Position numbers and translations under genes: made by a program
Part shown: one piece after another, positions 17,535 through 60,899 of the stretch
How the letters are laid out: each line of letters begins with the position of its first letter
How positions within the stretch are numbered: position 1 is the first letter of the stretch
Notes under the pieces: generated by a model
What the model saw: the letters and a program-made list of their open reading frames with translations, nothing else
Databases searched by the model: none
What the model was told of the DNA's origin: nothing
Source of the DNA: Macrostomum lignano
Lineage: Eukaryota
Reading direction: 5' to 3'
DNA length: 61,823 bases
Assembly: GCA_002269645.1 (NCBI GenBank)
Contig: NIVC01004070.1
Span: 1 to 61,823, forward strand

Positions 17535-18853
17535 CGAGGGGTGATCAAAAAGTTCTGCAACCTTTTGTTATAGCTTTTAGTTATAGAATCAGCAAAAGCC
17601 AAAAACTTACACATATGCGGCTATATCTGTTTGCTATATTTATATGCATTTTTGGCTTCCAAATGTGCTCCAGTAAAATTTCACAGCCATATATTTTCCA
17701 TGTGTTTTCAGTAGCTGATGGAAACATCAAAAGACAGTGTTCGCTTCTATATCTTTATGTGCATGCAACTTGGTTGCAAAGTGACAGAGATTCACACCAT
17801 GTTTTGTGAATGTTTTAGCTGACTCTGCTCCATCATTTGACACAGTTGCCTGCTGGCTGCGCCATTTCTTGGAAGGCTGGGACAGCTTCAACGATGAACC
17901 AAGGTCTGGCCGACCCCGGACATCCGTGACCGAAGATGTCGTGGCCCATGCCGATGCAATAATTCATGAGGATTGGAGCTTTTTGCTAAGATTCATTGCC
18001 TATGAGCTTGGTGTCAGCTATGGAAGTGCTCATAACATCATGCATGAGCAACTAGGCCGCACAAAGACCTGCGCTCGGTGGGTACCCCATCTTCTCACTC
18101 CGGAGCAGCAAGCAGAGAGGGTGCGCATCTGTCGCTTGTGGCTGCAAATGTTTGAGCCCCACGGCCCACGACAACTGTCAGATGTCATCACAGGAGACAA
18201 ATGTTGTATCTCCTTCTTTACCATGAGGGATAAGCAGTCCAACATGGTCTGGCTGGCAGAAGATGAGCCAAGGCCTGAGGTGCTGAAGACCGGATTCCGC
18301 AGTCGGAAGCGGATGTTCACCATTTTTTTCAACTCTCAGGGTGTTGTATCGGTGAACATCCTTCCAGCGGGTGCCACAGTGACTGCCAGGTACTACACAG
18401 ACACTGTTCTGCCAGGCGTGCTGCAGGAGCGGCAGGAACGTGCGCGAACCAGGCATGGACCTCGACTCCTGCTGCACCATGACAATGCGGCACCGCACAG
18501 AGCGGCATCAACCATGGCGTACCTGGAGCAGCAGGGGGTCCGGCTGCTGCCCCATCCACCCTACTCTCTAGACCTAGCACCTTCCGACTTTTGGCTGTTC
18601 CCGAGGATCAAATCCGTCGTTTCTGGGAGGCCGTTTTCACGCATGCAAGACCTTGCCCAAGCGGTACATTCAGCTCTACAGGGTATACCAACTTTGGAGT
18701 ACCATGACTGCTTTCAGACATGGTGCACACGGATGCGACGGTGCATAGATAGTGGTGGAAAGTACTTTAAGGGAATGTGACACTGATTAGACGCCTCGGC
18801 TGCTGCAGCACAGAGTTGTGAGGTCACTTGCAGAACTTTTTGATCACCCCTCG
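17535..18853 (+). mobile_element. Mariner DNA transposon (DD34D), probably irritans-subfamily-like, defective
   Basis: Perfect 26-bp TIR CGAGGGGTGATCAAAAAGTTCTGCAA, TA on both flanks, 1319 bp long. Confidence 0.95.
17806..18780 (+). pseudogene. Mariner transposase remnant
   Basis: WVPHLL, VITGD, HHDNA-(34)-D within YSLDLAPSDF. The 5' end is broken by a stop and frameshift near 17807; the usual DE-x-W and YSPD motifs read DKC and YSLD. Confidence 0.9.
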
Positions 18854-45161: not shown

Positions 45162-45270
45162 AGTAAATATAGCGCTTTGATTGTTTTGCATCGCATATTG
45201 AAAATGATAATCTATCTAAAACCTGCTTCCAGACCAGGCCGGCCTGGCCTCTGTAACTGAGCACTCTGCC

Positions 45271-48200
45271 ATGTCCGAGGCTCGAAGGCGATCAGCTGGC
45301 ACTGGCGCCAAGGGTGGCGCCAAAGATGATTCCGCGCTTGCTGACCAAGGCGCCACGGTGGCGACCTCCGAGTCGAAGCGGCGCCTGCCGCGCAGCAGCA
45401 GCCTGAACCGCCTGGAGGACATGGAGACTCTGGAGCGGGCAATCAAGGAGATGGCGCCCGATAAGCCGTGAGTGGTGCATCCAGATTTATATTTGGGATA
45501 AATATAACCTATCTCGGTCTATTGAAACATAATGGATCAGATTGGATGTAGAATCGGTCAGATTGGATATAGAATCGGTCAGATTGGATATAGAATAGGT
45601 CAGATTGGATGTAGAATCGGTCAGATTGGATATAGAATCGGTCAGATTGGATATAGAATAGGTCAGATTGGATGTAGAATCGGTCAGATTGGATATAGAA
45701 TAGGTCAGATTGGATGTAGAATAGGTCAGATTGGATATAGAATAGGTCAGATTGGATATAGAATAGGTCAGATTAGATGTAGAATCGGTCAGATTGGATA
45801 TAGAATAGGTCAGATTAGATATAGAATCGGTCAGATTGGATATAGAATCGATCAGATTAGATATAGAATCGGTCAGATTAGATATAGAATCGGTCAGATT
45901 GGATATAGAATCGATCAGATTAGATATAGAATCGGTCAGATTGGATATAGAATAGCTCAGATTGGATATATGCTCTGCATTTTCCCCATACATTCGCAGG
46001 TTGCACAGCCTGGTTGACAGCCCGTTCTCCTCTTCGAGCGGCTTCAACAACTTCCGCGGCCTGCTGAACCTGGGCCTCATCCTGCTGGTGGTGTCGAACT
46101 TCCGGGTGGCGCTGGAAAACATAATCAAGTACGGTATCCTGGTGGACCCGGTCAGGCCCATCGAGATCTTCCTGTCCTCGCCTGGCCAGTGGCCGTGCAT
46201 CTGCCTGCTGCTCATGTGCAACATTTTCATCTTCATCGCCTTCGGCCTCGAGCTGCTGGCGGAGAATTTCCGGCTGGTGTCGCCCGCCCTCTCCTGTCTG
46301 CAGGTGGGCAATCTGGCCGCCCTGCTCCTCGTGCCGTCCTACCTCATTCTGAGAGACCACCCGAATCCATGTGAGCTGCGGCTGTCTGGGGGCTATAGAC
46401 CTGCCCTGTGCTGTGGGTATTAGACTTGCCTTGTGCTGTGGGGGTATTAGACCTGCCCTGTGCAGTGGGGTATTAGACTTGCCTTGTGCTGTGGGGGTAT
46501 TAGTCCTGCCTTGAGATCTGGGGTATTAGACCTGCCTTGTGCAGTGGGGTCTTAGACCTGCCTTGTGCTCTGGGGGTATTTGACTTACTTCTTGACTTAG
46601 CTGCAGGGCTGTCCCGAAGGGGACACAGCGGGAAGGCGCGGGCGCCCATTCCGCTAGTCCCTGAACGGCCGACGCGTCGCTATGGACGGAGGGTTGGCGC
46701 CGCCCAGGGAGGTCCCCCAGTGTCGCCAGCAGCTATGGTGCTCTCTGGAAAGGAGAGTTCAGCCCTGCGGGTGGCCCGAAGGTAGCGCATGAGCTGATTA
46801 AAGTTTTCGGGTTTGCACGCTTCAGTAATAGATGTGTGTGGCCCGAGGTAAGTGAGTCTGGCCCGCGTGAAGGCGGGACAGATGCTGACGAAATGCTCAG
46901 CGGTTTCGTCACCTGAGTTGCAGAAGCTACAGGTGGCGTTGGTGGCGTTGCCCTGCAGGTACTGGTGCCTGGAGAAGCAGCCGTGACCAGAGAGGGTCAT
47001 GGTGGCAGCCCGGATGTCTCTGCGCGAGAGGCGCAAGAGGAGCTTCGGAGCTGGTGAGAGGGCTGAGGGACAGCGCCTCTGGATTGCCTGCAGTTCGTGC
47101 GGTTCGCCCAAGTCGAGCGGTGCTGAGTCCTGATCCACGCTTTGATGCGCGAGTCGATGACACAGCCAGGAATCGGGACAAGAGGTTCGGGGCCGAGAGA
47201 GGAGCCGGAGGCACCAACTTTTGCAAGGGTGTCAGCCAACTCATTTCCTCGGATCCCCACATGCCCCGGAACCCACTTAAGGGTAATTTTGTTGGCGGAA
47301 CCCAACATGTTGAGGAGTTTGATACAGTCGAGGACTGTAGCAGAGTTGGTGCTGCAGCCACTGATGGCGTGCAAGGCAGCTTGGCTGTCCGAATGGAAAA
47401 TGATGTTCTTACCAGTAACGCCAGTGGCGAGAAGCTCTGCAGTGCAGGAGCTGATGGCCAGAACTTCATTTTGGAAAACACTGGAGTTGACCCCAGTGTA
47501 TTGAGCGTGGGTAGCGATGACCCTCCCGTTCAGAAAGATTCCAACACCAAAGCCGGTGTTGGCTGACTGCTTAGAACCGTCGGTGTAGCAATGAAGCTCA
47601 CCAGGGTTCTATTGGTCATTGATGTTATCGCGCGAGTCGATAGCTACGGAGTAGCGCTGTCTCAGGTTGAGCGTTGAGGCAATGCCATCGGTGAAGACGC
47701 GATTGGCCTGACACTCGTTGAGAAAGTTGAGGCACAGATCGCTATGCGGGACAAGGTTCCGCTTAGCAGGTGCTCTCATGTAAATGAATTTGACGCCGGC
47801 ATCAATTAGACGCCGCGTCGTTCTAGCCGCCTCACCCCTGATGAAGAGGTCAAGAGGCGGAAGATTAAGGAAGGCCCCCATGCCAGCAAAGGGCGTGGAC
47901 CTGGTGGCGTTGCAGATGAGCCTACACGCTCTGCCTTGGATCGTGTTGAGCAGGTCTGCATGGCTTTTGACCTGGGTAGCGCTAACCCAGACAACAGAGG
48001 CGTACGTAATGGCAGGTCTAACTACGGAAGTATAGATCCACCAAAGCCGCTTTGGGGATAGACCCCAAGAAGTGCCAAGTGCTCGTCGGAGCTGGGCCAG
48101 GATGGCTGAGGCACGCTTGGCTTTTGCTTTCACGTGGAAGGACCAGTTGAGCCGGTGGTCAAGTATGACCCCGAGACATCTGGTCTGGTGCGCGAAGGCA

Positions 48201-51200
48201 ATATCTCTGCCGTAGAGCTGCAGAGGACGTATGTTCCAGCGTAGTCTGCTGGTAAACATAATGGCAACGGTTTTGGGCTCAGAGAGTTCCAGACCATTGT
48301 CATTGGCCCAGGATTCTGCTTTGCGGATAAAGCTCTGCATCAGATCCCTGAGCGTGCTGGGAGACGGTCCTGCCACAATGGCCGTGACGTCATCAGCATA
48401 CCCGACTTTGAAGACGGGGTCGGGTCGGGAGTCACTCAAAAGAGCGTCCATGACCAGGTTCCAGAGCGTCGGGGTGAGGACTCCGCCTTGGGGTCCACCC
48501 TTACAGACTCTGGTGGAGGCAGTTTGCCCAAGAAGTTGGGCAGTGACCGTACGGTTGGAGATCATGTACATGATCCACCGTATGAGGGTAGCATGAGCTT
48601 TGCGATTTTGAAGGGCCCTCTGAAACGCTTCAAAGATAACGTTGTCGAAGGCGCCAACAATGTCAAGAAAGAGAGCCAGAGCGTAACCGTCACCCAGTAC
48701 CGCCCTTTCAATCTTCTCGACAATCGCATGCAAGGCGCTGTCAGTCGACCTCCCGGTACGGAAGGCGTGCTGATTATTGCTGAGGGGCATCGCTGTCAGC
48801 TCGCAGGACAGCAGCCGCCAGAGAATAAGCCTCTCAGTGAGCTTAAGCATTGCTGACGTTAAGCTAATAGGCCGGAAGGCCTTGACGCTTTGGTAGTCGC
48901 CCTTCCCAGGTTTGGGAATAAAGACTACCCGAGCTTCAGTCCAGCATTTGGGAACGTATCCCAGCTGGATAGAGGCCCGCATAAGATTGCGGGTGAGTCT
49001 CAGGAACGAGGGTATCTTGGCTGCTTCACGAAGGAGAACAGGGTAGATACCATCAGGTCCAGGAGATTTGAAGGGTTTGAAGGTTCTGACCGCACGAGCG
49101 ATTAGGTCTTCAGTGACAATGCCCGCCGATAGGGTGGCTCCATCCATCGAATGGTTGGGCTCCGGTCTAGCAGTAGGTACCCTCGGGAAGAATGTGCTAA
49201 GCATATGCTGAAGCACTTCTTCAGGGTCTTTAGTAAGAGAGCCATCATCTTTTTTGATCATGGCTAATTTGGACATTTTGTCCATTGTAAGGGCCTTGAC
49301 AAGCCTAGAAGTAGGTCTGTCTTGATCCAATTCATTGCAGAATTGGCGCCACTTACATTCCTTGGCCTTGCGCACTTCAGATTTGAAATTGCGGGAGGCT
49401 TGCCGGAAAAGCTCCATGTCCTCCGGGTTTCCGGTCTTCATGGCACGGCGATGAAGGCTTTTGGCCTTCCGCCTGAGTTTCCCCAGCTCCGGGTTCCACC
49501 ACGGCGCCGAGGTCTTGCCTTTGTAGGCGCGAGCAGGACAAGCCGCTTCGTAGGCTTCAATAATGCAACCTGTCAGCGTCTCAGCCATATGATCCACATC
49601 CTCGCAGGTCTCAATCGGACGTAAGTCCGTGAGTTCCTGCAGGTACAGATCAAGGGCAGCCTTGTAGGCCGCCCAATCAGTGTTGCGGATATTGCGTCTC
49701 CAAGTGATCGGAGACTGGGTTTTAGTGTCCGCGATGTTAAAGGCGATAAAGCAGTGGTCAGACAGGGAGGGCTCCTCAGACCAGACTCTCCACTCCTCAA
49801 CTCTGTCAAAGAGTCTTGGGGTAACGAGTGTGGCGTCGAGGACCTCGGTCCATCTGCTATTATTAAAGGTAGGAGTGCTGCCGCGGTTGCAGAGCATGAG
49901 GTTTGTGTTAGAGATGAGGGCCAGAAGCTCCTCTCCTCTAGTGTTGGTATCTTTACTGCCCCAGTGCTTGTGGTGCGCGTTGAGGTCGCCCCCTAAGCAC
50001 AGCTCAGCGTTCTGGGACTCGCAGTACTGCGCGAGGCGCAGTAAACTCTCAGGAGCAGGGTCTCTGTCGCCTGGGATATAAACCGAGGCAACAAGACACG
50101 TACGCGGAGAGAAATGATTAGATTGGATGACGCAAAGGTCTCCATCAGAGAGATCAGTCCTCAGCCAAGCCTGGAGATGGCTAGCAGCGAGGATAGCCGC
50201 TCTAGGGCGACTGTTCCCCGGGCCACACACATAAAAATCAGAGTAGCCAGAGGGAATGTTGGGCAACTTACCGTTGCGCATCCAGGGTTCCTGGATCAGG
50301 ATGAGGCCTGGCCTGTACAGCTCAGCAATCTTCATCAGATTTACTGACGCAGATACGCAATGCTGTAAATTAATTTGCAGACAGAATGTCGCTCCTTTGG
50401 CAGCGTGGAGCTTAGTCATACTGTATTAAATGCAATTTCTGGCTAGAGCCCAGGGCCATCAAGGAGACTTGGACAACAGATCGTCCTCGTCCCAGGCCGC
50501 TGGGGCTTGACTGGGAGATGGGAGTTGGTCGACGTCCATGGCCTCCTCACCCCCACCGGCCCCCCCAGCAGAGTCCTCAGGCTCCGATGACAGGATGGAG
50601 GAAGCTTCCTCACCTGCATCTTTACCTTCAGACCCCACCAGGGTGGCCGAGGAGAGCTCGGATTCCGAAGACCCGGCCTCGTCCTCAACTCCTTCTCCGA
50701 CTGGCAGGTTTGGTTCCCGGGGCTTGGCCGGAGCCGTTACCGCGGTCGCCGAACTGCTGCTAGCAGAGGGGCGAGACGCAGCTTTGGCTTTGGGATCGGC
50801 TTGCGCCTTTCCTTGGGCCTTAGACTGCGCCCCGCTCTTGCCGGAGATGCCGGGGTTGGCAGTAGCCTTCCCTTTGGCAGACTTTCCTCGGCGCATCTTG
50901 AGCTTGAGGGCACCCAGCTGGAAAGAGGATCCATTAGGGTACCGACTCGCCCAAGTGCTGGAAAGGCCGAGGACAATTGAGTTGCCCGTCTCCCCCCTGC
51001 GGACTTTGCGGTGATACACCAGTCCACTAGCAGGGAGGTCGGGGTTCAGACGCAGTAGGACCCGGCGAATAACGTCTGGTCCAGCTGCGGTGCTCTTAGC
51101 AGGGACGAAAACCACATAGGGTATCGTCTTTGGACGCTGGCCCTCGCGAAGAAAAAGAGCTCCGCCAAGGTCAGCATCCAAGGAGACCGTCGGTAGCCGC

Positions 51201-54200
51201 TGGAGCAGCTGCCGAGCGTCCTCCTCGCTGCTAGGAGCAATAAGAACGAATGTGCTTCGCAGCACCATCCGCTCAATGCCGATGGAGATTCCCTCCTCGA
51301 CAGTCAGCTCAATCAGATAGGAGTCAACAGCACTCCACACTTTTTGAAGCTGATCAGTGGTCCAGTCCTGGTCGCGACCTTGGATGATCACTCCCGGGAT
51401 TTTGGCCTTGGCCTTCGCCGCAAAGGTAGCTCCCGAAGGAACCTCCTTGTTGGCAGTGGCCATTTGTTGCGCCGTGGTTTCGGCCTCAGCAGCCGCAGCA
51501 GCATCTCCAGGGAGCGCCGCCGCTGAACTACCGGAGCTTCCACCGGCCGGCCCGTCTGGTTGCCTTGGGACGCCAGTCGCTTCAGCATCCATGGTGGACG
51601 CCGCCGCTTTGGCCCCCGCAGCTCCCTTCTTGGCCTGCCTTTTGGCGCGTTGTTTAGCGCGTTTGCGCTCAAGCCGAGCCCGCTGAGCTTCGTCAGATCT
51701 GCCAGATTTGGCCGGTCCTTTAGGCTCAGAGCTCGCGGTTCCCTTAGATCCACCAGCGGAGCTGGCAGGTCTTTGGGTATTTTGAGTTTGGTAGCTCTGG
51801 TCGGATCTGCCAGCAGAGCCAGCCGGTCCTTCTTTTGCCACAGTTGAATCAGTCGGTTGGGATCTGCCAGCAGGGCCGGCCGGTCCTTCGGACTGAGGTT
51901 GGGGTTTAGAAGGGTCCCCGTCCCTAGAAATAGCTTGTTTATCCATAGACGGCTCGAAGGCCATGATAGAAGGTTGGTGGGCTACCCTCAAAGGGGCGCG
52001 GTACCCACCCGGCCGCTCCACCTAACCGGGCAGTAGGCCAATAGCACCCTCAAGGCTGGCCCGACACCAGGAGGGGGACCGCTTGCGACCGGACTACTCC
52101 CCGGCCTTCCAGCCCATCGGCACGGTCAACACCTTAGGCATTAGAGAGTACGTTGAGCAGTACCACGGCCTGCAGGTTGGCGAGCCAGACCCGCATACCC
52201 AAATTCGGCCGAAGCCACTGGATAGGGTCGCCAGCGCCGGAGCCCAGTCTGTCCAGCAGCCCTAGGGACTGCCTTGAACACACGCGGGGACGAGTACCCT
52301 GGGTCGACTTGCGAGACAGCGTGGGGGGGTCTGCGGCTGCCAGAGGCAAATAGAGGGTGCAGACCTCCCACCAGCCTTGACCTGCTGAAGATAGGGGCAG
52401 GCGTGAAGCATCGCAGACCTTAGCCCATGGGCCTAGTCTGTCTCATACTTCACTGGCATGCTGAATACGCCTTCGCGTGCTCTGGGGGTATTAGTCCTGC
52501 CTTGAGATCTGGGGTATTAGATCTGCCTTGTGCAGTGGGGTCTTAGACCTGCCTTGTGCTTTGGGGGTATTAGACCTGCCTTGTGCTCTGGGGGTATTAG
52601 ACCTGCCTTGTGCTCTGGGGTATTAGACCTGCCTTGTGCTCTGGGGGTATTAGACCTGCCTTGTGCTCTGGGGGTATTAGACCTGCCTTGTGCTCTGGGG
52701 GTATTAGACCTGCCTTGTGCTTTGGGGGTATTAGACCTGCCTTGTGCTCTGGGGGTATTAGACCTGCCTTGTGCTCTGGGGGTATTAGACCTGCCTTGTG
52801 CTCTGGGGGTATTAGACCTGCCTTGTGCTCTGGGGGTATTAGATCTGCCTTGTGCTTTGGGGGTATTAGACCTGCCTTGTGCTCTGGGGGTATTAGACCT
52901 GCCCTGTGCTCTGGGGGTATTAGACCTGCCCTGTGCTCTGGGGGTCATAGACGTGTTCGCCTCCCTCTTTGCAGTCTTCAGCGCGCCAACCCTGGGCATT
53001 TACTCCATCGTGTTCCTGAAGCTGTGGTCCTACCGGGACATGAACTCCTGGTGCCGTCTGGAGCGCCAACTGCAGCTCAACAAGCGCTCAGAGCTCAAGC
53101 GGAACAAGAGCATCGCCTCCGTGCTCACGGAGGCTGGGGCCGACGGGGACGGCGGCAGCGAGCGGCTGCGGCTGGCCAGGGGGTCCTCCAGCCGGTCCTC
53201 CCTGCTGTGCTACCCGGAGAACCTGACTCTGGGCAACCTGTACTACTTCATGATGACGCCGACTCTCTGCTATGAGCTCAACTTTCCCAGGCTGATGCGA
53301 ATTCGGAAGCGATTCTTGGTCAAGCGATGTCTGGAACTCGTGTTCCTGCCGCAGGTAAGCCGGGCAGCAGGTGTCAGCAATGCAGTGTCAGACCACATAA
53401 GTCACTCAGTCGCGCAATGTCAGATCAAATGAGTCAGTGTCACTCAGTGTCAGTCAAGTCAGGCACAATTCTGCAGTCGCTTTCGTAGTGTCAGATTAAA
53501 TCAGATGAGTCAGGCACAGCTATGCGCAGTCAGATCAGATGAGTCAGGCACAGCTATGCAGTCAGATCAGATGAGTCAGGCACAGCTATGCAGTCAGATC
53601 AGATGAGTCAGGCACAGCTATGCAGTCAGATCAGATGAGTCAGGCACAGCTATGCAGTCAGATCAGATGAGTCAGGCACAGCTATGCAGTCAGATCAGAT
53701 GAGTCAGTCACAGCTATGCAGTCAGATCAGATGAGTCAGGCACAGCTATGCAGTCAGATCAGATGAGTCAGGCACAGCTATGCAGTCAGATCAGATGCCA
53801 GTCACGCAGTGTCAGCAGTCCAGCTACGCCTCGCATCCGCAGGTGATGGCGGGCCTGACGCAGCAGTGGATCATTCCGATCCTGAACAACTCCGTGAAGC
53901 CGCTGCAGGCCTCGGAATGGCCGGTGGTGCTGGAGCGGCTGCTGAAGCTGGCCATCCCCAACCACCTCATCTGGCTGATCTTCTTCTACGTGTTCTTCCA
54001 CTCCGCGCTGAACGTGGCCGGGGAGCTGACGCTGTTCGGCGACCGCAACTTCTACAAGGACTGGTGGAACAGCGAGAGCGTCACCGAGTTCTGGACGCTC
54101 TGGAATGTGCCCGTTCACCGCTTTGCCAAGCGGCACATCTTCACTCCGCTGATCCACCGCTGGGGCTTCAACAAGCTGCTGGCCTCTGTTGTGGTCTTCG

Positions 54201-55007
54201 CCGTGTCCGCCTTCTTCCACGAGCTGCTGGTATCCGTGCCGCTGCGCATGTTCCGGCTCTGGGCTTTCCTGGCCATGATTATGCAGGTGCGCGGGACAGG
54301 GCTGATCCCTGTGCTGGTCCCAATGTGCTGGTCCCACCGATCCCACCGCTGGTCCCAGTGTACTAGTCTCACTGATCCCTGTGCTGGTCCCAGTGTACTA
54401 GTCCCACCGATCCCACTGCTGGTCCCAGTGTACAAGTCCCACTGATCCCTGTATTGGTCCAAGTGTGCTGGTCCCAGTGTGCTGGTCCCAGTGTGCTGGT
54501 CCCAGTGTGCTGGTCCCAGTGTGCTGGTCCCAGTGTGCTGGTCCCAGTGTGCTGGTCCCAGTGTGCTGGTCCCAGTGTGCTGGTCCCAGTGTGCTGGTCC
54601 CAGTGTGCTGGTCCCAGTGTGCTGGTCCCAGTGTGCTGGTCCCAGTGTGCTGGTCTGGTCCCAGTGTGCTGGTCCCAGTGTGCTGGTCCCAGTGTGCTGG
54701 TCCTACTGATCTCAGTTCTGATCCCAGTGTGCTGGTCCCAGTGTACTAGTCCCACCGATCCCACTGCTGGTCACTCCTGCAGATGGGCAGCTGAGCAGGT
54801 CACTCCTGCAGATGGGCAGCTGAGCAGGTCACTCCCCACCCGCAGGTTCCGTTCGCCATGTTCGTCAGTCGGGTTCTCCGAGGCGGTCAGCTCGGCAACA
54901 TGGCGGTGTGGCTCAGCCTCATCATCGGACAGCCTCTCGCCATCATCATGTACTTTCACGACTACTACGTGAGCCTGCACCAGGGCAAGGCTGAGGGTGC
55001 TGTGTGA
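45271..55007 (+). CDS. DGAT1: Diacylglycerol O-acyltransferase 1 (MBOAT), 517 aa; exons 45271-45467, 46000-46370, 52975-53354, 53843-54286, 54846-55007
   Basis: SPFSSSSGFNNFRGLLNL, FLKLWSYRDMNSWCR, YPENLTLGNLYYF..PTLCYELNFPR, FGDRNFYKDWWN, SAFFHE, GQPLAIIMYFHDYY. All five exons join in frame through GT-AG introns. Confidence 0.95.
45533..45970. repeat. 21-bp minisatellite filling DGAT1 intron 1
   Basis: Unit GGATATAGAATCGGTCAGATT, about 20 copies. Confidence 0.95.
46385..46580. repeat. 27-bp minisatellite of DGAT1 intron 2, left part (split by the LINE)
   Basis: Unit GGTATTAGACCTGCCTTGTGCTCTGGG. Confidence 0.9.
46680..50419 (-). CDS. LINE ORF2 (AP endonuclease - reverse transcriptase - RNase H - CCHC finger), interrupted by one TAG at 47609-47611 and a frameshift near 47045
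   Basis: LQINLQHC, LIQEPW, GGDLNAHH, SDH (APE); SPGPDG, FRPISL, LDIVGAFD, PQGGVLTP, YADD (RT); after the stop CYTDGSK...EVLAI...SDSQAAL (RNase H); CSFC-x8-H-x4-C. Confidence 0.93.
50459..51964 (-). CDS. LINE ORF1 (gag-like), low-complexity termini
   Basis: Long open frame directly upstream of ORF2 (39-nt gap). First ATG at 51964, basic RKRAKQRAKRQAKK stretch, acidic tail; no clear zinc knuckle. Confidence 0.8.
   Translation of the reverse strand: MAFEPSMDKQAISRDGDPSKPQPQSEGPAGPAGRSQPTDSTVAKEGPAGSAGRSDQSYQTQNTQRPASSAGGSKGTASSEPKGPAKSGRSDEAQRARLERKRAKQRAKRQAKKGAAGAKAAASTMDAEATGVPRQPDGPAGGSSGSSAAALPGDAAAAAEAETTAQQMATANKEVPSGATFAAKAKAKIPGVIIQGRDQDWTTDQLQKVWSAVDSYLIELTVEEGISIGIERMVLRSTFVLIAPSSEEDARQLLQRLPTVSLDADLGGALFLREGQRPKTIPYVVFVPAKSTAAGPDVIRRVLLRLNPDLPASGLVYHRKVRRGETGNSIVLGLSSTWASRYPNGSSFQLGALKLKMRRGKSAKGKATANPGISGKSGAQSKAQGKAQADPKAKAASRPSASSSSATAVTAPAKPREPNLPVGEGVEDEAGSSESELSSATLVGSEGKDAGEEASSILSSEPEDSAGGAGGGEEAMDVDQLPSPSQAPAAWDEDDLLSKSP
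52477..52950. repeat. 27-bp minisatellite of DGAT1 intron 2, right part
   Basis: Same unit as 46385-46580, about 17 copies. Confidence 0.95.
53495..53795. repeat. 32-bp minisatellite in DGAT1 intron 3
   Basis: Unit CAGTCAGATCAGATGAGTCAGGCACAGCTATG, about 9 copies. Confidence 0.95.
54305..54775. repeat. 14-bp minisatellite in DGAT1 intron 4
   Basis: Unit GTGTGCTGGTCCCA with degenerate edges. Confidence 0.95.
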
Positions 55008-55710
55008 GGCACCGGCGCAGCTCATCTGGAGTCTCGTCTGCAAACTCTGGAACTTTTTATTGAAGCAGAAATTTGTCTAATAGGTACCTTGCTACTCTGC
55101 GCTGCATGCTAAGTACTTAACTATTTCAGATTAGATATGCAAGCTTTCTGTTAGTGTTTAGCAAGTTTCACTAGAATCAGTGAGCCCGCACTTATTGAGC
55201 AGCTTTATTGTCCGATCTAATTCTGATTCATTATTTGTTTGAAGCAGCCGTTTTTCTCTTTCTAATTGTGACAATTTTTCTCAACCGAGTCCCGCGGACC
55301 TTTGCTTGTGCCCTGCGCAGCCCTTGCTGCAGTTGTTGCCCAGCGCGCCCACTGATGCAGCGGGCTCGCACTGCATTGACAATTGCACGCTGTGCTGGGA
55401 CCTATTGGGACTTCTGTGTTGAGGCTGGTTGACTTTGCGGTCCGACTGCTGCAACTGGCACTGCTATCTGTACTCAATCTAATCAAATAAACTGTCCGAT
55501 CGCTGTCTTGTTATTTTTCCTCGCGATTCGAAACTCACTGGGCTGTTTTTTGCCGCTGCCTTGTAAATCATTTTGGTGCGGCAGGTGGTTTTTGGCTCGG
55601 GTTCAGCTTGCTTCCTCAGCTCTGAGTTACTTCTGTTTAAAAACCCTGGGCACCGCGTTATCCATTGACTGTGCAGTCTAAGTAGGATCTGGCACTTCTG
55701 TGCGAGCAAC

Positions 55711-56532
55711 ACCCCATAGTGGGATCAGCACCTCATAGTGGGATCAGCACCTCATAGTTGGGATCAGCACCTCATAGTGGGATCAGCATCCATAGTGGGA
55801 TCAGCACCCCATAGTGGGATCAGCATCCCATAGTGGGATCAGCACCCCATAGTGGGATCAGCACCCCATAGTGGGATCAGCACCCCATAGTGGGATCAGC
55901 ACCTCATAGTGGGATCAGCATCCCATAGTGGGATCAGCACCACATAGTGGGATCAGCACCCCATAGTGGGATCAGCATCCCATAGTGGGATCAGCACCCC
56001 ATAGTGGGATCAGCATCCCATAGTGGGATCAGCACCCCATAGTGGGATCAGCACCCCATAGTGGGATCAGCATCCCATAGTGGGATCAGCACCTCATAGT
56101 TGGGATCAGCACCTCATAGTGGGATCAGCACCCCATAGTGGGATCAGCACCCCATAGTGGGATCAGCATCCCATAGTGGGATCAGCACCCCATAGTGGGA
56201 TCAGCACCCCATAGTGGGATCAGCACCCCATAGTGGGATCAGCATCCCATAGTGGGATCAGCATCCCATAGTGGGATCAGCACCCCATAGTGGGATCAGC
56301 ACCCCATAGTGGGATCAGCATCCCATAGTGGGATCAGCACCCCATAGTGGGATCAGCATCCCATAGTGGGATCAGCACCTCATAGTGGGATCAGCATCCC
56401 ATAGTGGGATCAGCATCCCATAGTGGGATCAGCACCCCATAGTGGGATCAGCATCCCATAGTGGGATCAGCACCTCATAGTGGGATCAGCATCCCATAGT
56501 GGGATCAGCACCCCATAGTGGGATCAGCACCC
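55711..56532. repeat. 19-bp minisatellite between DGAT1 and MRPL46
   Basis: Unit CCCCATAGTGGGATCAGCA, about 43 copies. Confidence 0.97.
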
Positions 56533-56565
56533 AGGATCTGCATCCCAGTCCCCCGCCATCCGCAG

Positions 56566-57840
56566 GCTACATCAGCCGCTGTGGCTGCCCTGTGGCGATC
56601 GGGCTCAGCCGCCACTCCGGCCTCACCCGGTCTGGCCGGCTGCTCAGCGTTGGCCTGCTCATCCAGCGCAAAGCTGTGCTCACGCCTGACCTCACTGAAC
56701 TGGAGACTCGAGCCTCGGACCTCTTCACCCGGCTGGACTTTGAGCGCAGCCGCCTGTCCGACTTTGAGCTGCGCGACCGCGCCGAGTCGGAGGCAGCCAA
56801 GCGGAGCCTCAGCGCAGCCGCGGAGGGCAAAGTCCAGGTGGCCAGGGACGGCGCCGTAATTACCGCCAAGGACCTGATGCAGCGGTGGGCTGCTGAGCAA
56901 CAGGCAGTCACTCTGGCCTCCAGGTGTGCTGTCGGTTTCACTTAATGCTTTAATTGTATTGCATAGCCACTCTCGCTACTCACAGTAGCTGTTTGCACAG
57001 CTAGGTCAGCTGCAGTCCGTCCTCACTACTCACAGTATCAAATAGCTGTTTGCACAGCTAGGTCAGCTGCAGTCCGCTCTCACTACTCACAGTAGCTGTT
57101 TGCACAGCTAGGTCAGCTGCAGTCCGCTCTCACTACTCACAGTAGCTGTTTGCTCAGCTAGGTCAGCTGCAGTCCGCTCTCACTACTCACAGTAGCTGTT
57201 TGCACAGCTAGGTCAGTTGCAGTCCGCTCTCACTACTCACAGTAGCTGTTTGCACAGCTAGGTCAGCTGCAGTCCGCTCTCACTACTCACAGTAGCTGTT
57301 TGCACAGCTAGGTCAGCTGCAGTCCGCTCTCACTACTCACAGTAGCTGTTTGCACAGCTAGGTCAGTTGCAGTCCGCTCTCACTACTCACAGTAGCTGTT
57401 TGCACAGCTAGGTCAGCTGCAGTCCGCTCTCACTACTCACAGTAGCTACTCCGCATTCTCTCCACCACAGGGAGGCCGCCGACCCCAGCCTGAAGCGGCC
57501 AGCCGTGCTGCTCAGCACGGATGCTGACCTCTGCCTCCCCTGCTGCCCAGTTGTTGACGGCGACGCCAGCCTTCGAGCCGCCTGCGACCGCCTACTGGAG
57601 CTGATGGGGCTGACCGCCAGCTGCCGGTTGCTAGGCAACGCGCCAGTCGGCCTGCACACGTACAAGTACAAGAAATCCCCAGTTTCCCTGTTCCTGCACC
57701 GGGCCATCTTCACCGGTGCCGACTGGCGCAGCGCGGAGGCCTCGGGCAGCTGGAAGTGGGTGGACGCGGACTCGCTGCCCGGCCGCGTCCCGGACAGGCG
57801 GCTGCTGAAGAAGCTGCGGCTGCTGGCTGCCGAGTTTTGA
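56566..57840 (+). CDS. MRPL46: Mitochondrial ribosomal protein L46; exons 56566-56923 and 57471-57840; no genomic start codon found
   Basis: RLLSVGLLIQRKAVLTPDLTELE...FERSRLSDFELR and LLGNAPVGLHTYKY recall the MRPL46 segments WRLL.ALCLQR...ERSLYSDHELR and FLGNAPCGHY.FKF. The phase-2 intron AG|GT..CAG|G is in frame. Confidence 0.82.
56972..57448. repeat. 50-bp minisatellite filling the MRPL46 intron, about 9.5 copies
   Basis: Unit CACAGTAGCTGTTTGCACAGCTAGGTCAGCTGCAGTCCGCTCTCACTACT. Confidence 0.95.
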
Positions 57841-58106
57841 CTTTTAATTTGTAGCTTCACTGGCAGCAGCCCAGTTACTTTGTAGCCTAATGTGTTATCA
57901 TTGATTGCTAGCTTTTTCTACCCATAAAATGCACCCTACACTGCATTTTCTGCGTGCAGACCTTTGCTGCTAGAACAATTTTCTGTTGTTTCGCTTTTTA
58001 TTTTTTGTTCTTGTTAATTTTCTGCTTTTTGTTCTTAGAATTTAACTTCAATAACTTTTACTCCCTACTAGCAGTAGTCTGTTCGATCGCTCCGCAGCCT
58101 CTTCCT

Positions 58107-59695
58107 ATGCCGCTGCTGCCGCTGCTGTCCTCTGGGCGGCTGGCCCGTCTGACCGCCTCTGGCCGCCGTCTTCTCAGCTCCACCAGCGGCGGCGCGCAGC
58201 CTCCCAAGACCGGCATCCTCATGCTGAACATGGGCGGGCCGGAGACACTGGACGATGTTGGCGACTTTCTGCACCGCCTGTTCAGTGACGGGGACTTGAT
58301 CCCGTTGCCCGCACAGTCTCGGCTGTCTAAGTACATCGCCAGGAGGCGCACCCCGGCCATCAGGGAGCAGTACTACCGCATTGGCGGCGGCAGCCCAATC
58401 CTCAAGTGGACTGAGGCTCAGGTGAGTCCCCGCTCAGGGGACAGTTTTAGCTTTTGTTTAGCTTCAATCTTAGTATTCGGTGAGTGGATGCAAATTTTCT
58501 AGCGATACTGGCTTGGCATTTCACATATGAGCTTCTGCATGTGTCCAAGTGCGAGACTCGGACTCACGATTGGCCAGGACCAGTGTCTGAGTTCTCTTTG
58601 CCAGCTCAAAGACACACGCGTCAAATTTCTGTTTATCCATCAGTGCGCAACCTTTTGCACACCCTATAAGAGATTCGCTTCAAATTGTTTCCTTGCTTCT
58701 CTTCAGTAGGCGATCTCTCTTATATATCACTGTTCGGGTGCCGATATGTATCGTAAATAACTTTCCAGCATGTCAGACTTCGTAGGAGCTGACCAGCCAT
58801 GAAAGCTGACCATGGGAGAATTATCCCCAAACCCGCAGGGCCGCGCCATGACGGCTCAGCTGGACCGGCTGAGCCCGGGATCGGCGCCGCATCGCCACTA
58901 CGTTGGCTTCCGCTACGCCCGGCCGCTGCTGGAGGACGCCGTGGAGGCGATGGAGCGGGACGGCGTGCAGCACGCGATCGCCTTCTCACAGTACCCGCAG
59001 TACTCCTGCAGCACCAGCGGCAGCTCCTTCAACGCGCTGGCCGCGTACTACCGCAAGCGCAGCGGGGCCAGCAGCATTCAGCGCTGGTCGCTCATCGACC
59101 GCTGGCCGGCGCACGCTGGCTTCGTGGCCGCCGTGGCGAGCGGGTTCGGCCAGAGCTGGATAGGCTGGGGCCGGAGGAACGGGCCCGCTGCGCGCTGCTG
59201 TTCTCCGCCCACTCGCTGCCCATGTCGGTGGTGAACCGGGGCGACCCGTACCCGGCTGAGGTGGCCGTCACCGCCCATATGGTGGCGCAGGCGCTGGGCC
59301 CCGGCAGCGTGCCGTACCGGCTGGTCTGGCAGTCCAAGGTGGGTCCGCTGCCCTGGCTGGGCCCCAGCACGGAGGAGGCCATCCGCGGCCTGGTGAAGCG
59401 CGGCCGCGACCAGCTGGTTCTGGTGCCCATCGCCTTCACCAGCGACCACATCGAGACGCTGTACGAGCTGGACGTCGAATACGCAGGCAAACTGGCCGGC
59501 GACCTCGGCGCCCGCGTCCTCCGCTCCGAGGCTCTCAACGACAGTCCGACCTTCGTGTCTGCGCTGGCCGACCTGGTGCTGCAGCACCTGGCCGAGGGCT
59601 GCACCGTCAGCTCGCAGTTCCAGCTGCGCTGCCCGCTGTGCACAAATCCCAGGTGCGCCGCGGCCAGGGAGTTCTTCGCCCAGCATGGCAACTGA
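58107..59695 (+). CDS. FECH: Ferrochelatase, mitochondrial; exons 58107-58421 and 58839-59695; frameshift near 59137
   Basis: [92 protein letters not shown], and the C-terminal [2Fe-2S] motif CPLCTNPRC. Confidence 0.96.
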
Positions 59696-60530
59696 CTGGC
59701 TGCTGTCTTACCGGTGCTGATCCTCCTTTATTGCGTCTGTTCAGCAATTGTATGTTTTTGTCTTACCGGCTGCATTCGGTTGACGATTTTGGTTTACCTG
59801 CGACGGCCCACAATGTATAACTGGGGCTGATATTTGCACCGCTTGTTCTTATAGTTAGTTATAGGCAGGTGCATGCCTTTGGCGCTGACCTGCTTCTCCC
59901 AGATTCCTTCGCTTTGTTCTGCTTTATTCGGCATTTTCAGCTAGTAAAAATGAATTGTATGGCTGTAACTGTGCATTAATTATTAATCATATCGAAATAA
60001 ACTCGGAGTTGCTGGCGCCTCTGTGAGAGCTCTGCAACTGATCAGCTTTACTACTTGACAGAATATCTAGTGTGGCTTCCTGGACAATCGTACCTGAGCC
60101 AATAATTAATGGAATGCGTTCTCGTTGCTGGGTTAATGTGATTTTTGCTGCGCTATTTGGCAGGTACTTTGTGAACTTATTAGAACCCAACAGGCAGACA
60201 TTATGGCTTATGCGGTCACATGATGCAATTACAGCTACGAATATGCACATGGAAGAGTCAAATGTAGCACCTCTAGCGAGCGGCGACTTCTCTTAACTCA
60301 TTCACTCTACACTCGGAGGGGTCTACTATAAAGCTGTCGTAGCGTAAGTTCGATCGTACGTCGGAACTTTTACACTGCGGAAATAAGAACAATCTTATGT
60401 TACGATGGCTTTGTAGAACTGGCCCGGATATTTTAACATGGCACTGAGAGGAATCTTAAACTCCAGATAGTTATCATTGCTTCACAATGGACTTCGGTGG
60501 GCTGGATTCCGGGACTTCAGAGGGGCCGTC

Positions 60531-60899
60531 TCCCCAGTGCTTCAGTGGACTGGCTCCCCAGTGCTTCAGTGGACTGGCTCCCCAGTGCTTCAGTGGACTG
60601 GCTCCCAGTGCTTCAGTGGACTGGCTCCCCAGTGCTTCAGTGGACTGGCTCCCCAGTGCTTCAGTGGACTGGCTCCCCAGTGCTTCAGTGGACTGGCTCC
60701 CCAGTGCTTCAGTGGACTGGCTCCCCAGTGCTTCAGTGGACTGGCTCCCCAGTGCTTCAGTGGACTGGCTCCCCAGTGCTTCAGTGGACTGGCTCCCCAG
60801 TGCTTCAGTGGACTGGCTCCCCAGTGCTTCAGTGGACTGGCTCCCCAGTGCTTCAGTGGACTGGCTCCCCAGTGCTTCAGTGGACTGGCTCCCAAGTGC
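60531..60899. repeat. 24-bp minisatellite, about 15 nearly identical copies
   Basis: Unit CAGTGCTTCAGTGGACTGGCTCCC. Confidence 0.97.

What the first reader, a model, noticed from the sequence alone, without database searches (positions are those of the whole stretch)
55486..56640. MRPL46 lacks a genomic start codon: candidate spliced-leader-donated AUG
From the DGAT1 poly(A) signal (AATAAA, 55486) through the 19-bp array to the acceptor CCATCCGCAG| at 56565, I find no plus-strand ATG. The first in-frame ATG (~56877) would delete the conserved L46 N-terminal region. Adding AUG directly at the acceptor gives MATSAAVAALWRSGSAATPASP, a convincing mitochondrial presequence, which joins RLLSVGLL after one added base near 56628. 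Flatworm spliced leaders end in AUG and can supply the initiator Met (established); that this occurs here is inference. A possible donor (AA|GTAGGA, ~55682) just before the array suggests the intercistronic repeat is itself spliced out.
Basis: partly seen in the sequence, partly recalled or inferred. Interest (0 to 1): 0.75.

Follow-up and report, generated by a model that had tools for sequence, protein, structure and literature searches.

The report
Flatworm mL46 gene borrows spliced-leader AUG
In this Macrostomum lignano contig the mitochondrial ribosomal protein L46 gene has no start codon of its own and almost certainly gets it from the AUG at the end of the trans-spliced leader. That mechanism is already established in flatworms, so this is a correct but ordinary finding, complicated here by a one-base assembly deletion.

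Summary
The window is the whole contig NIVC01004070.1 of the Macrostomum lignano assembly Mlig_3_7. In detail: there is no plus-strand ATG from 55356 to 56876, the longest such gap in the window.

The mL46 (MRPL46) reading frame begins directly after a CAG acceptor at 56563-56565. An in-frame TAG lies 66 nt upstream with no ATG between. The first in-frame ATG (56877) lies downstream of the whole Pfam MRP-L46 match.

Three near-identical paralogous contigs and two independent UniProt models read ATSAAVAALWRSGSAATPGLTRSGRLLSVGLL. So the window lacks one G in the run at 56619-56620, not near 56628. FECH has a second private one-base deletion at 59136. Both are probably uncorrected PacBio errors.

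GenBank annotates a paralog's mL46 CDS as 5'-partial, starting on the first base after the acceptor. DGAT1, mL46 and FECH carry locus tags of one transcriptional unit. [quoted passage not shown]

Best reading: a DGAT1-mL46-FECH operon in which the leader's terminal AUG starts mL46. No leader-bearing read was seen directly. The suggested GT donor at 55682 is unnecessary and unsupported. This is a new example of a known mechanism.

The parts
55005..55007 (+). Stop codon (TGA) of DGAT1, the upstream cistron
   Evidence: The GenBank DGAT1 CDS (PAA48745.1) ends at window 55007; sequence.
55486..55491 (+). AATAAA poly(A) signal of DGAT1
   Evidence: It is the only AATAAA within 1.8 kb upstream of the junction, and it is conserved in all four copies.
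55492..56565 (+). Intercistronic spacer between DGAT1 and mL46. It has no ATG and is discarded on trans-splicing. About 250 nt remain once the array is subtracted.
   Evidence: The repeat-adjusted spacing fits the operon criterion of PMC8629364.
55710..56532 (+). 19-bp tandem array (consensus CACCCCATAGTGGGATCAG, 43.3 copies). Each unit carries a TAG, so all three frames are closed within its last units.
   Evidence: Copy number is 43/42/35/10 in the four paralogous copies. The frames open only from 56481, 56500 and 56519.
56544..56565 (+). Pyrimidine-rich tract and CAG trans-splice acceptor (cccagtcccccgccatccgCAG|)
   Evidence: Sequence. The GenBank paralog CDS starts on the next base. It is conserved in L003 and L005; L004 reads CATG here.
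56566..56923 (+). mL46 (MRPL46) exon 1. It has no genomic start codon and is read as M(leader)-ATSAAVAALWRSGSAATPGLTRSGRLLSVGLL... after repair of one base.
   Evidence: Pfam PF11788; PDB mL46 hits at about E 3e-9; paralog products; alignment.
56619..56620 (+). G-run with a private one-base deletion (GG here, GGG in three paralogs). It shifts the frame between the presequence and the mL46 body.
   Evidence: Protein models P0242, P0245, P0246, P0248 and P0249 all read AATPGLTRSG.
56924..57470 (+). mL46 intron (GT...AG), mostly a 50-bp tandem array (56970-57447)
   Evidence: The splice reproduces the annotated paralog proteins.
57471..57840 (+). mL46 exon 2, ending in TGA (57838-57840)
58090..58421 (+). 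FECH acceptor (ctccgCAG|, AG at 58096-58097) and FECH exon 1 (58098-58421). Its own ATG at 58107 lies 9 nt in frame behind the junction.
   Evidence: The GenBank partial CDS PAA48746.1 starts at 58098. The junction is identical in all four copies.
59136..59136 (+). Second private one-base deletion (a C missing), which truncates the annotated FECH

Best explanation

Proposed mechanism:
1. DGAT1 is cleaved and polyadenylated just after AATAAA (55486).
2. The 35-nt spliced leader (...UUGCAUG) is trans-spliced onto G56566, at the CAG acceptor 56563-56565.
3. The roughly 1.06-kb spacer, including the 19-bp array, is discarded. No cis donor is needed.
4. The leader's terminal AUG becomes codon 1, in frame with the exon. 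The product is M-ATSAAVAALWRSGSAATPGLTRSGRLLSVGLLIQRK..., a 243-aa precursor.
5. The first ~25-30 residues have no acidic residues and are rich in Arg, Ser, Thr and Ala. They serve as the mitochondrial presequence ahead of the conserved mL46 body.

The frame break in this contig is a one-base deletion in a G-run (56619-56620). It is most likely an uncorrected PacBio assembly error, like the deletion at 59136 in FECH.

Shown here: organism identity; absence of any genomic ATG; the acceptor; the frame in the paralogs; the annotated CDS boundary; the deletion.
Inferred: that leader-bearing mRNAs exist at this junction, that the leader AUG is the one translated, and that the N-terminus targets mitochondria.
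For: - Organism. The window is GCA_002269645.1 contig NIVC01004070.1, and its DGAT1 is PAA48745.1 [Macrostomum lignano].
- Leader and operon criteria. The leader is CGGTCTCTTACTGCGAAGACTCAATTTATTGCATG, the acceptor motif is YTNCAG, and operon spacers are often inflated by repeats, with a repeat-adjusted distance under 1 kb (PMC8629364). The terminal ATG is regarded as the likely start codon in Macrostomum (PMC10468722). Use of the flatworm leader AUG as initiator is established (Cheng et al. 2006, as cited).
- No genomic start. No plus-strand ATG lies in 55356-56876. The same holds in L003 and L005. The in-frame TAG upstream has no ATG between it and the junction.
- mL46 identity, and need for the N-terminus. 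Pfam PF11788 scores above its cut-off, PDB mL46 hits reach about E 3e-9, and the domain match lies upstream of the first ATG.
- Annotation. Paralog product PAA71769.1 (242 aa, partial) starts with the first codon after the acceptor. The FECH partial CDS also starts on the first base after its CAG. Gene boundaries in this annotation come from leader-bearing and poly(A) reads.
- One transcriptional unit. The locus tags run Mlig014809 g1/g2/g3 for DGAT1/mL46/FECH on one contig, and all copies in the Mlig000493 family share that prefix.
- Deletion. Exon 1 is otherwise 100% identical in the four copies. Window, L003 and L004 show no substitutions in 2.6 kb, only private one-base deletions.
- Imprint. 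L004 carries CATG| instead of GCAG| at positions -4 to -2, the exact 3' end of the leader. The assembly was Pilon-polished with RNA-seq.
- Presequence. The first 40 residues have 5 Arg/Lys and no Asp/Glu.
Against: - No leader-bearing read or cDNA was accessible. Exact look-ups of M+mL46 and of leader read-through products found nothing.
- The window copy as assembled is frameshifted, and GenBank annotates no mL46 CDS on it. This copy could be a real pseudogene.
- The acceptor CCGCAG matches YTNCAG only partly.
- Two other paralog CDSs start 15 and 18 nt inside the exon rather than at the junction.
- Reading the L004 CATG as a polishing imprint is my inference.
Confidence: 0.85

Rival explanations
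1. This particular copy is a genuine pseudogene. The one-base deletions in mL46 (56619-20) and FECH (59136) are real mutations in a redundant duplicate of a polyploid genome. The leader-AUG mechanism would then operate only in the intact paralogs.
For: Two frameshifts lie in coding sequence on one contig. GenBank annotates no mL46 CDS here and only a truncated FECH. M. lignano carries many duplicated genes (PMC10468722).
Against: Window, L003 and L004 show no substitutions over more than 3 kb. They differ only by private single-base deletions in short homopolymer runs, including in non-coding sequence of L004. That is the spectrum expected from residual PacBio errors in multi-copy regions that short reads polish poorly, not from decay.
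Confidence: 0.1
2. mL46 is expressed by cis-splicing from DGAT1 as a DGAT1-mL46(-FECH) fusion protein, as in UniProt models A0A1I8G7S7 and A0A1I8G984. DGAT1's ATG would then serve all three.
For: The two UniProt models join ...HQGKAEGA to ATSAAV... at the same acceptor. GT dinucleotides sit just before the DGAT1 stop. Sharing of acceptors between cis- and trans-splicing is reported in parasitic flatworms.
Against: The transcript-based GenBank annotation separates three genes, with DGAT1 ending at its stop codon and an AATAAA 480 nt downstream. The fusion models are gene predictions on an older assembly. Fusing an ER membrane acyltransferase to two mitochondrial proteins that each have their own presequence-like N-terminus is biologically implausible.
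Confidence: 0.04
3. The gene has a genomic ATG after all. The L004 form (cccATG|GCTACA) is the true sequence, and the CAG forms are the errors or are non-functional.
For: L004 has an in-frame ATG exactly at the junction.
Against: Three of four copies, including the diverged paralog L005, have CAG. The L004 change is a cluster of three adjacent substitutions among copies that otherwise show none, and it reproduces the last bases of the leader. The assembly was polished with RNA-seq. The change also destroys the acceptor, and GenBank does not use this ATG.
Confidence: 0.04
4. Translation starts at the first genomic in-frame ATG (56877) or at a non-AUG codon, and the upstream open frame is fortuitous.
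For: 56877 is the first genomic in-frame ATG.
Against: Starting there would delete 103 residues, including the whole Pfam MRP-L46 match and the region aligning to human mL46 residues 45-130. The upstream frame is conserved and open exactly to the acceptor in the paralogs.
Confidence: 0.02

Closest known systems
[quoted passage not shown]
   Same: The leader ends in AUG. The recipient exon starts directly with the second codon. There is no alternative AUG upstream of the conserved N-terminus. The N-terminus matches orthologues only if the leader AUG is used.
   Different: Those cases are in parasitic Neodermata and rest on cDNAs and reporter assays. Here the species is the free-living macrostomorph M. 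lignano, and the evidence is genomic plus annotation only.
Macrostomum lignano SL trans-splicing and operons (Wudarski et al. 2017, PMC5730564; Ustyantsev and Berezikov 2021, PMC8629364)
   Same: There is a single 35-nt leader ending in ATG. The cistrons lie on the same strand. The downstream cistrons start at CAG acceptors. The spacer is inflated by tandem repeats but short after subtracting them. The genes are conserved housekeeping genes.
   Different: Those papers do not discuss this gene or quantify leader-AUG-dependent ORFs. In this contig the mL46 CDS is missing from the annotation because of a frameshift.
Caenorhabditis elegans SL2-type operons
   Same: A polycistronic pre-mRNA is resolved by 3' end formation of the upstream gene coupled to trans-splicing of the downstream gene.
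   Different: Nematode leaders do not end in AUG and do not supply the start codon. There is a dedicated SL2 for downstream genes, whereas M. lignano has one leader. Spacers are typically about 100 nt without large repeat arrays.

Membership tests
SL trans-spliced mRNA with leader-donated start codon (flatworm type) | The organism has an SL RNA whose exon ends in AUG | tested here: met
   The window was identified as M. lignano Mlig_3_7. The leader sequence ending in ATG comes from PMC8629364 and PMC10468722. No SL RNA gene lies in the window itself.
SL trans-spliced mRNA with leader-donated start codon (flatworm type) | [quoted passage not shown] | tested here: met
   A CAG lies at 56563-65 behind a pyrimidine-rich tract. 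No plus-strand ATG lies between the DGAT1 3' UTR and the acceptor in the window, L003 or L005. The match to YTNCAG is partial (CCGCAG).
SL trans-spliced mRNA with leader-donated start codon (flatworm type) | The leader AUG is in frame with the conserved ORF, with no stop in between and no earlier usable genomic AUG | tested here: met
   Met in paralogs L003, L004 and L005 and in five protein models. In the window itself it is met only after restoring one G at 56619-20.
SL trans-spliced mRNA with leader-donated start codon (flatworm type) | Leader-bearing transcripts are observed at the junction | tested here: inconclusive
   The evidence is indirect only. The GenBank partial CDS starts exactly at the junction, and the annotation pipeline uses leader-bearing reads. 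L004 carries a CATG imprint. Direct look-ups found no transcript-derived product.
SL trans-spliced mRNA with leader-donated start codon (flatworm type) | Translation actually initiates at the leader AUG | not testable with these tools
   This needs Ribo-seq, N-terminal proteomics or a reporter assay.
M. lignano operon (criteria of Ustyantsev and Berezikov 2021) | Adjacent same-strand genes, the downstream one trans-spliced, with a repeat-adjusted intergenic distance under 1 kb | tested here: met
   AATAAA to junction is 1080 nt, of which 823 nt is array, leaving about 250 nt. From the mL46 stop to the FECH junction is 257 nt. The locus tags share one transcriptional-unit prefix. Trans-splicing itself is inferred, as in the row above on leader-bearing transcripts.
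mL46 (MRPL46, Pfam PF11788) | Sequence match to the family profile and to solved mitoribosome mL46 chains | tested here: met
   PF11788 scores 24.3 bits against a cut-off of 21.9. PDB mL46 chains match at E 2.5e-9 to 6e-9 over residues 10-231.

The most novel reading that the evidence does not exclude
The ATG at the junction in paralog L004 (NIVC01002568.1; cccATG|GCTACA in place of ccgCAG|GCTACA) could be real rather than an RNA-seq polishing artefact. One gene copy would then have hard-wired the leader-derived start codon into the genome, for example by gene conversion with a trans-spliced cDNA, while losing its acceptor. That would be a snapshot of a gene escaping dependence on trans-splicing.
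Probability: 0.05. Interest if true: 0.6.

Novelty: new member of a known kind. Interest (0 to 1): 0.25.

Why it matters
For biology this is one more documented case of a flatworm mechanism. It concerns a conserved mitochondrial ribosomal protein in a free-living model flatworm whose start codon and presequence exist only after trans-splicing.

Its practical value is for annotation:
- Genes of this kind are deposited as 'partial'.
- They get fused into chimeric models, as in UniProt A0A1I8G7S7 (DGAT1+mL46+FECH).
- They get dropped altogether when an assembly indel breaks the frame, as happened to mL46 on this contig.

The finding also flags two likely one-base assembly errors, and a probable leader imprint introduced by polishing a genome with RNA-seq.

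Tried and rejected
- **mL46 homology search.** It returned nothing. This was later explained: all M. lignano mL46 products sit in a 90% cluster represented by DGAT1, because the fused UniProt models link them.
- **FECH homology search.** It returned no Macrostomum hit, for the same reason.
- **Retrotransposon ORF look-up, to list nearby annotated genes.** Not on record.
- **Exact-sequence look-ups.** I tried M+mL46, a leader read-through form (VSYCEDSIYCM+mL46), M+FECH, FECH from its own ATG, the product starting at the 56877 ATG, and the window's frame-2 product. None is in the collection.
- **Rfam scan of the window.** No family matched, so no SL RNA gene lies here. No fragment of the leader of 8 nt or more occurs in the window or the paralog loci.
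- **Supplement and full-text searches for Mlig000493, Mlig014809 and MRPL46.** Nothing found.
- **Alternative acceptor at 56533-34.** It is in frame with mL46 in the window as assembled, which made it attractive before the paralogs were seen. I rejected it because it falls out of frame in the three intact copies.
- **GT donor at 55682.** It is conserved in all copies only because the whole spacer is. It matches GT[G/A]AG poorly, no model uses it, and trans-splicing does not need it.

Full report
**1. What the window is**

An exact-protein look-up of a single-exon aldolase-II gene placed the window on NCBI assembly GCA_002269645.1, contig NIVC01004070.1. That contig is 61,823 bp, so the window is the whole contig. 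The DGAT1 gene upstream of the finding is GenBank PAA48745.1, 'BOX15_Mlig000493g7, partial [Macrostomum lignano]'.

**2. The observation**

- The plus strand has no ATG between 55355 and 56877. That 1522-nt gap is the longest in the window; the next is 769 nt.
- 823 nt of the gap is a 19-bp array (55710-56532, 43.3 copies) whose unit cannot contain ATG.
- The remaining 696 nt of unique sequence would be expected to hold 8.0 ATGs. None of 2000 dinucleotide-preserving shuffles had zero. The region was chosen after the fact, so I treat this as real but only moderately beyond chance.
- AATAAA at 55486 and the acceptor ...CCATCCGCAG| ending at 56565 are as described.

**3. The gene**

- Exon 1 (to 56923), a GT...AG intron (56924-57470, mostly a 50-bp array) and exon 2 (57471-57840, ending in TGA) encode mL46.
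- Pfam PF11788 scores 24.3 bits against a cut-off of 21.9. Solved mitoribosome mL46 chains match at E 2.5e-9 to 6e-9.
- The Pfam match covers query residues 26-103. All of that lies upstream of the first in-frame ATG at 56877, so that ATG cannot be the start.
- Each array unit carries a TAG, so the three frames open only from 56481, 56500 and 56519, with no ATG.

**4. The frame problem**

As assembled, the frame that opens at 56566 (ATSAAVAALWRSGSAATPASPGLAGCS...) is not the mL46 frame.

The 90%-identity cluster of the DGAT1 protein turned out to contain everything needed:
- Three GenBank mL46 products from paralogous contigs:
  - P0246 = PAA71769.1, 242 aa, starting ATSAAV...
  - P0242, 237 aa
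  - P0245, 236 aa
- Intact FECH products.
- Two fused UniProt models, A0A1I8G7S7 and A0A1I8G984.

All five mL46-containing sequences read AATPGLTRSGRLLSVGLL.

I fetched the three paralogous loci: L003 (NIVC01001140.1), L004 (NIVC01002568.1) and L005 (NIVC01001141.1). Exon 1 is 100% identical in all four copies apart from two differences. The window has CCGG (56617-56620) where the others have CCGGG, and L004 differs at the junction, as described in section 6.

It lies at 56619-20 rather than about 56628, and 'ASP' is not part of the protein.

Over a further 2.6 kb, window, L003 and L004 show no substitutions and differ only by private one-base deletions. One of these, a missing C at window 59136, frameshifts FECH and explains the truncated GenBank product PAA48746.1. 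L005 differs by 11 substitutions and is a true diverged paralog.

A spectrum made only of deletions, in short homopolymer runs, among otherwise identical contigs of a Canu PacBio assembly points to residual assembly error rather than decay.

**5. Evidence for trans-splicing at 56565|56566**

- **Leader and operon criteria (literature).** M. lignano has a single 35-nt leader, CGGTCTCTTACTGCGAAGACTCAATTTATTGCATG. The acceptor motif is YTNCAG. Operon spacers are often inflated by repeats, with a repeat-adjusted mode near 100 bp and a working threshold of 1 kb (PMC8629364).
- **This spacer.** AATAAA to junction is 1080 nt, of which 823 nt is array. Array copy number is 43/42/35/10 in the four copies, so its length is not constrained.
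- **How the annotation was built.** Transcriptional units were cut into genes at peaks of leader-bearing reads and at poly(A) reads (TBONE; PMC5730564).
- **CDS boundaries.** The L003 mL46 CDS is 5'-partial and starts on the first base after the CAG. The FECH partial CDS likewise starts at window 58098, the first base after ctccgCAG|.
- **Locus tags.** On the L005 contig, DGAT1, mL46 and FECH are Mlig014809 g1, g2 and g3. The other copies share the prefix Mlig000493. By the paper's naming rule this means one transcriptional-unit family.
- **No room for an upstream exon.** No plus-strand ATG exists anywhere between the DGAT1 3' UTR and the acceptor in the window, L003 or L005. An independent ATG-bearing first exon has nowhere to sit.

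**6. A curious extra**

L004 reads cccATG|GCTACA where the others read ccgCAG|GCTACA. Positions -4 to -2 are changed to CAT, which are exactly the last bases of the leader (...GCATG). Window and L003, the copies otherwise identical to L004, show no other substitution in more than 3 kb.

Mlig_3_7 was polished with Pilon using RNA-seq mapped by STAR. I therefore read this as an imprint of leader-bearing reads on the consensus. If that is right, it is indirect RNA-level evidence for the junction. This reading is my inference; a real allele is the low-probability novel case.

**7. Mechanism**

The leader's terminal AUG becomes codon 1 and yields M-ATSAAVAALWRSGSAATPGLTRSGRLLSVGLLIQRKAVL... The first 40 residues have 5 Arg/Lys, no Asp/Glu and 8 Ser/Thr. 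Mammalian mL46 aligns from about residue 45 onward to RLLSVGLL. This fits a cleavable mitochondrial presequence.

Use of the flatworm leader AUG as initiator is established (Cheng et al. 2006, as cited). For Macrostomum it is stated as likely.

**8. What is not supported**

The GT at 55682 is not needed, because trans-splicing discards the spacer. It fits the GT[G/A]AG donor motif poorly, and no model uses it.

The fused UniProt proteins splice the end of DGAT1 to the same acceptor. I regard them as gene-prediction chimeras of an operon.

**9. Limits**

I could not see a leader-bearing read or cDNA. Look-ups of the expected transcript-derived products found nothing. The window's own mL46 is not annotated in GenBank. 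It could be a true pseudogene copy, to which I give about 10%.

**10. Verdict**

It is an instance of a known flatworm mechanism in a known trans-splicing species, so interest is low to moderate. The useful by-products are the two probable assembly indels, the chimeric database models and the likely polishing imprint.

Noticed in passing
window 59136 (FECH exon 2, 58839-59695): A private one-base deletion (a missing C: GTGGCGAGCGGG here, GTGGCCGAGCGGG in three paralogs) frameshifts ferrochelatase. GenBank therefore carries a truncated 239-aa product, PAA48746.1, for this contig.
   Followed up: yes
L004 3326-3331 (NIVC01002568.1), equivalent to window 56560-56565: The acceptor GCAG is replaced by CATG, which matches the last bases of the spliced leader and creates an in-frame genomic ATG. 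This is probably an artefact of Pilon polishing with RNA-seq reads that carry the leader.
   Followed up: partly
window 45227-45271: The DGAT1 5' end lies behind a consensus TTCCAG| acceptor (junction 45232|45233). A leader AUG here would be out of frame and open an 8-codon uORF (MTRPAWPL*) that ends before DGAT1's own ATG at 45271. So the first cistron may also be trans-spliced without using the leader AUG.
   Followed up: partly
window 58098-58109: FECH's own ATG (58107) lies 9 nt behind its acceptor and in frame with it. A leader AUG would add Met-Pro-Leu-Pro ahead of it, so two alternative starts are possible.
   Followed up: partly
UniProt A0A1I8G7S7 / A0A1I8G984 (P0248, P0249): These 1156-aa and 1143-aa 'Ferrochelatase, mitochondrial' models are chimeras of DGAT1 + mL46 + FECH. 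The operon was predicted as one gene on the older assembly.
   Followed up: yes
window 47609-52021, minus strand: A non-LTR retrotransposon (a 936-aa ORF with endonuclease and reverse-transcriptase domains, plus a 520-aa ORF1-like protein) sits inside a DGAT1 intron. It is not annotated in GenBank.
   Followed up: partly
window 17806-18780, plus strand: A mariner/Tc1-like transposase ORF (Pfam Transposase_1 and HTH_32) that starts with GTG. It is probably a decayed element.
   Followed up: partly
window 52477-52952, 53500-53797, 54302-54754, 56970-57447, 60530-60899; also about 21.5-25.3 kb: There are many high-identity tandem arrays (periods 14-50 bp) in introns and spacers of this gene cluster. 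A multi-kb array around 22-25 kb shows strong GC and AT skew. The mL46 spacer array is one of many, not a special element.
   Followed up: no
L001 (NIVC01003883.1): A fifth contig duplicates the aldolase-II and glutaredoxin end of the window. Its glutaredoxin-type product differs in length (344 aa against 315 aa). I did not determine whether it also carries the DGAT1-mL46-FECH operon.
   Followed up: no
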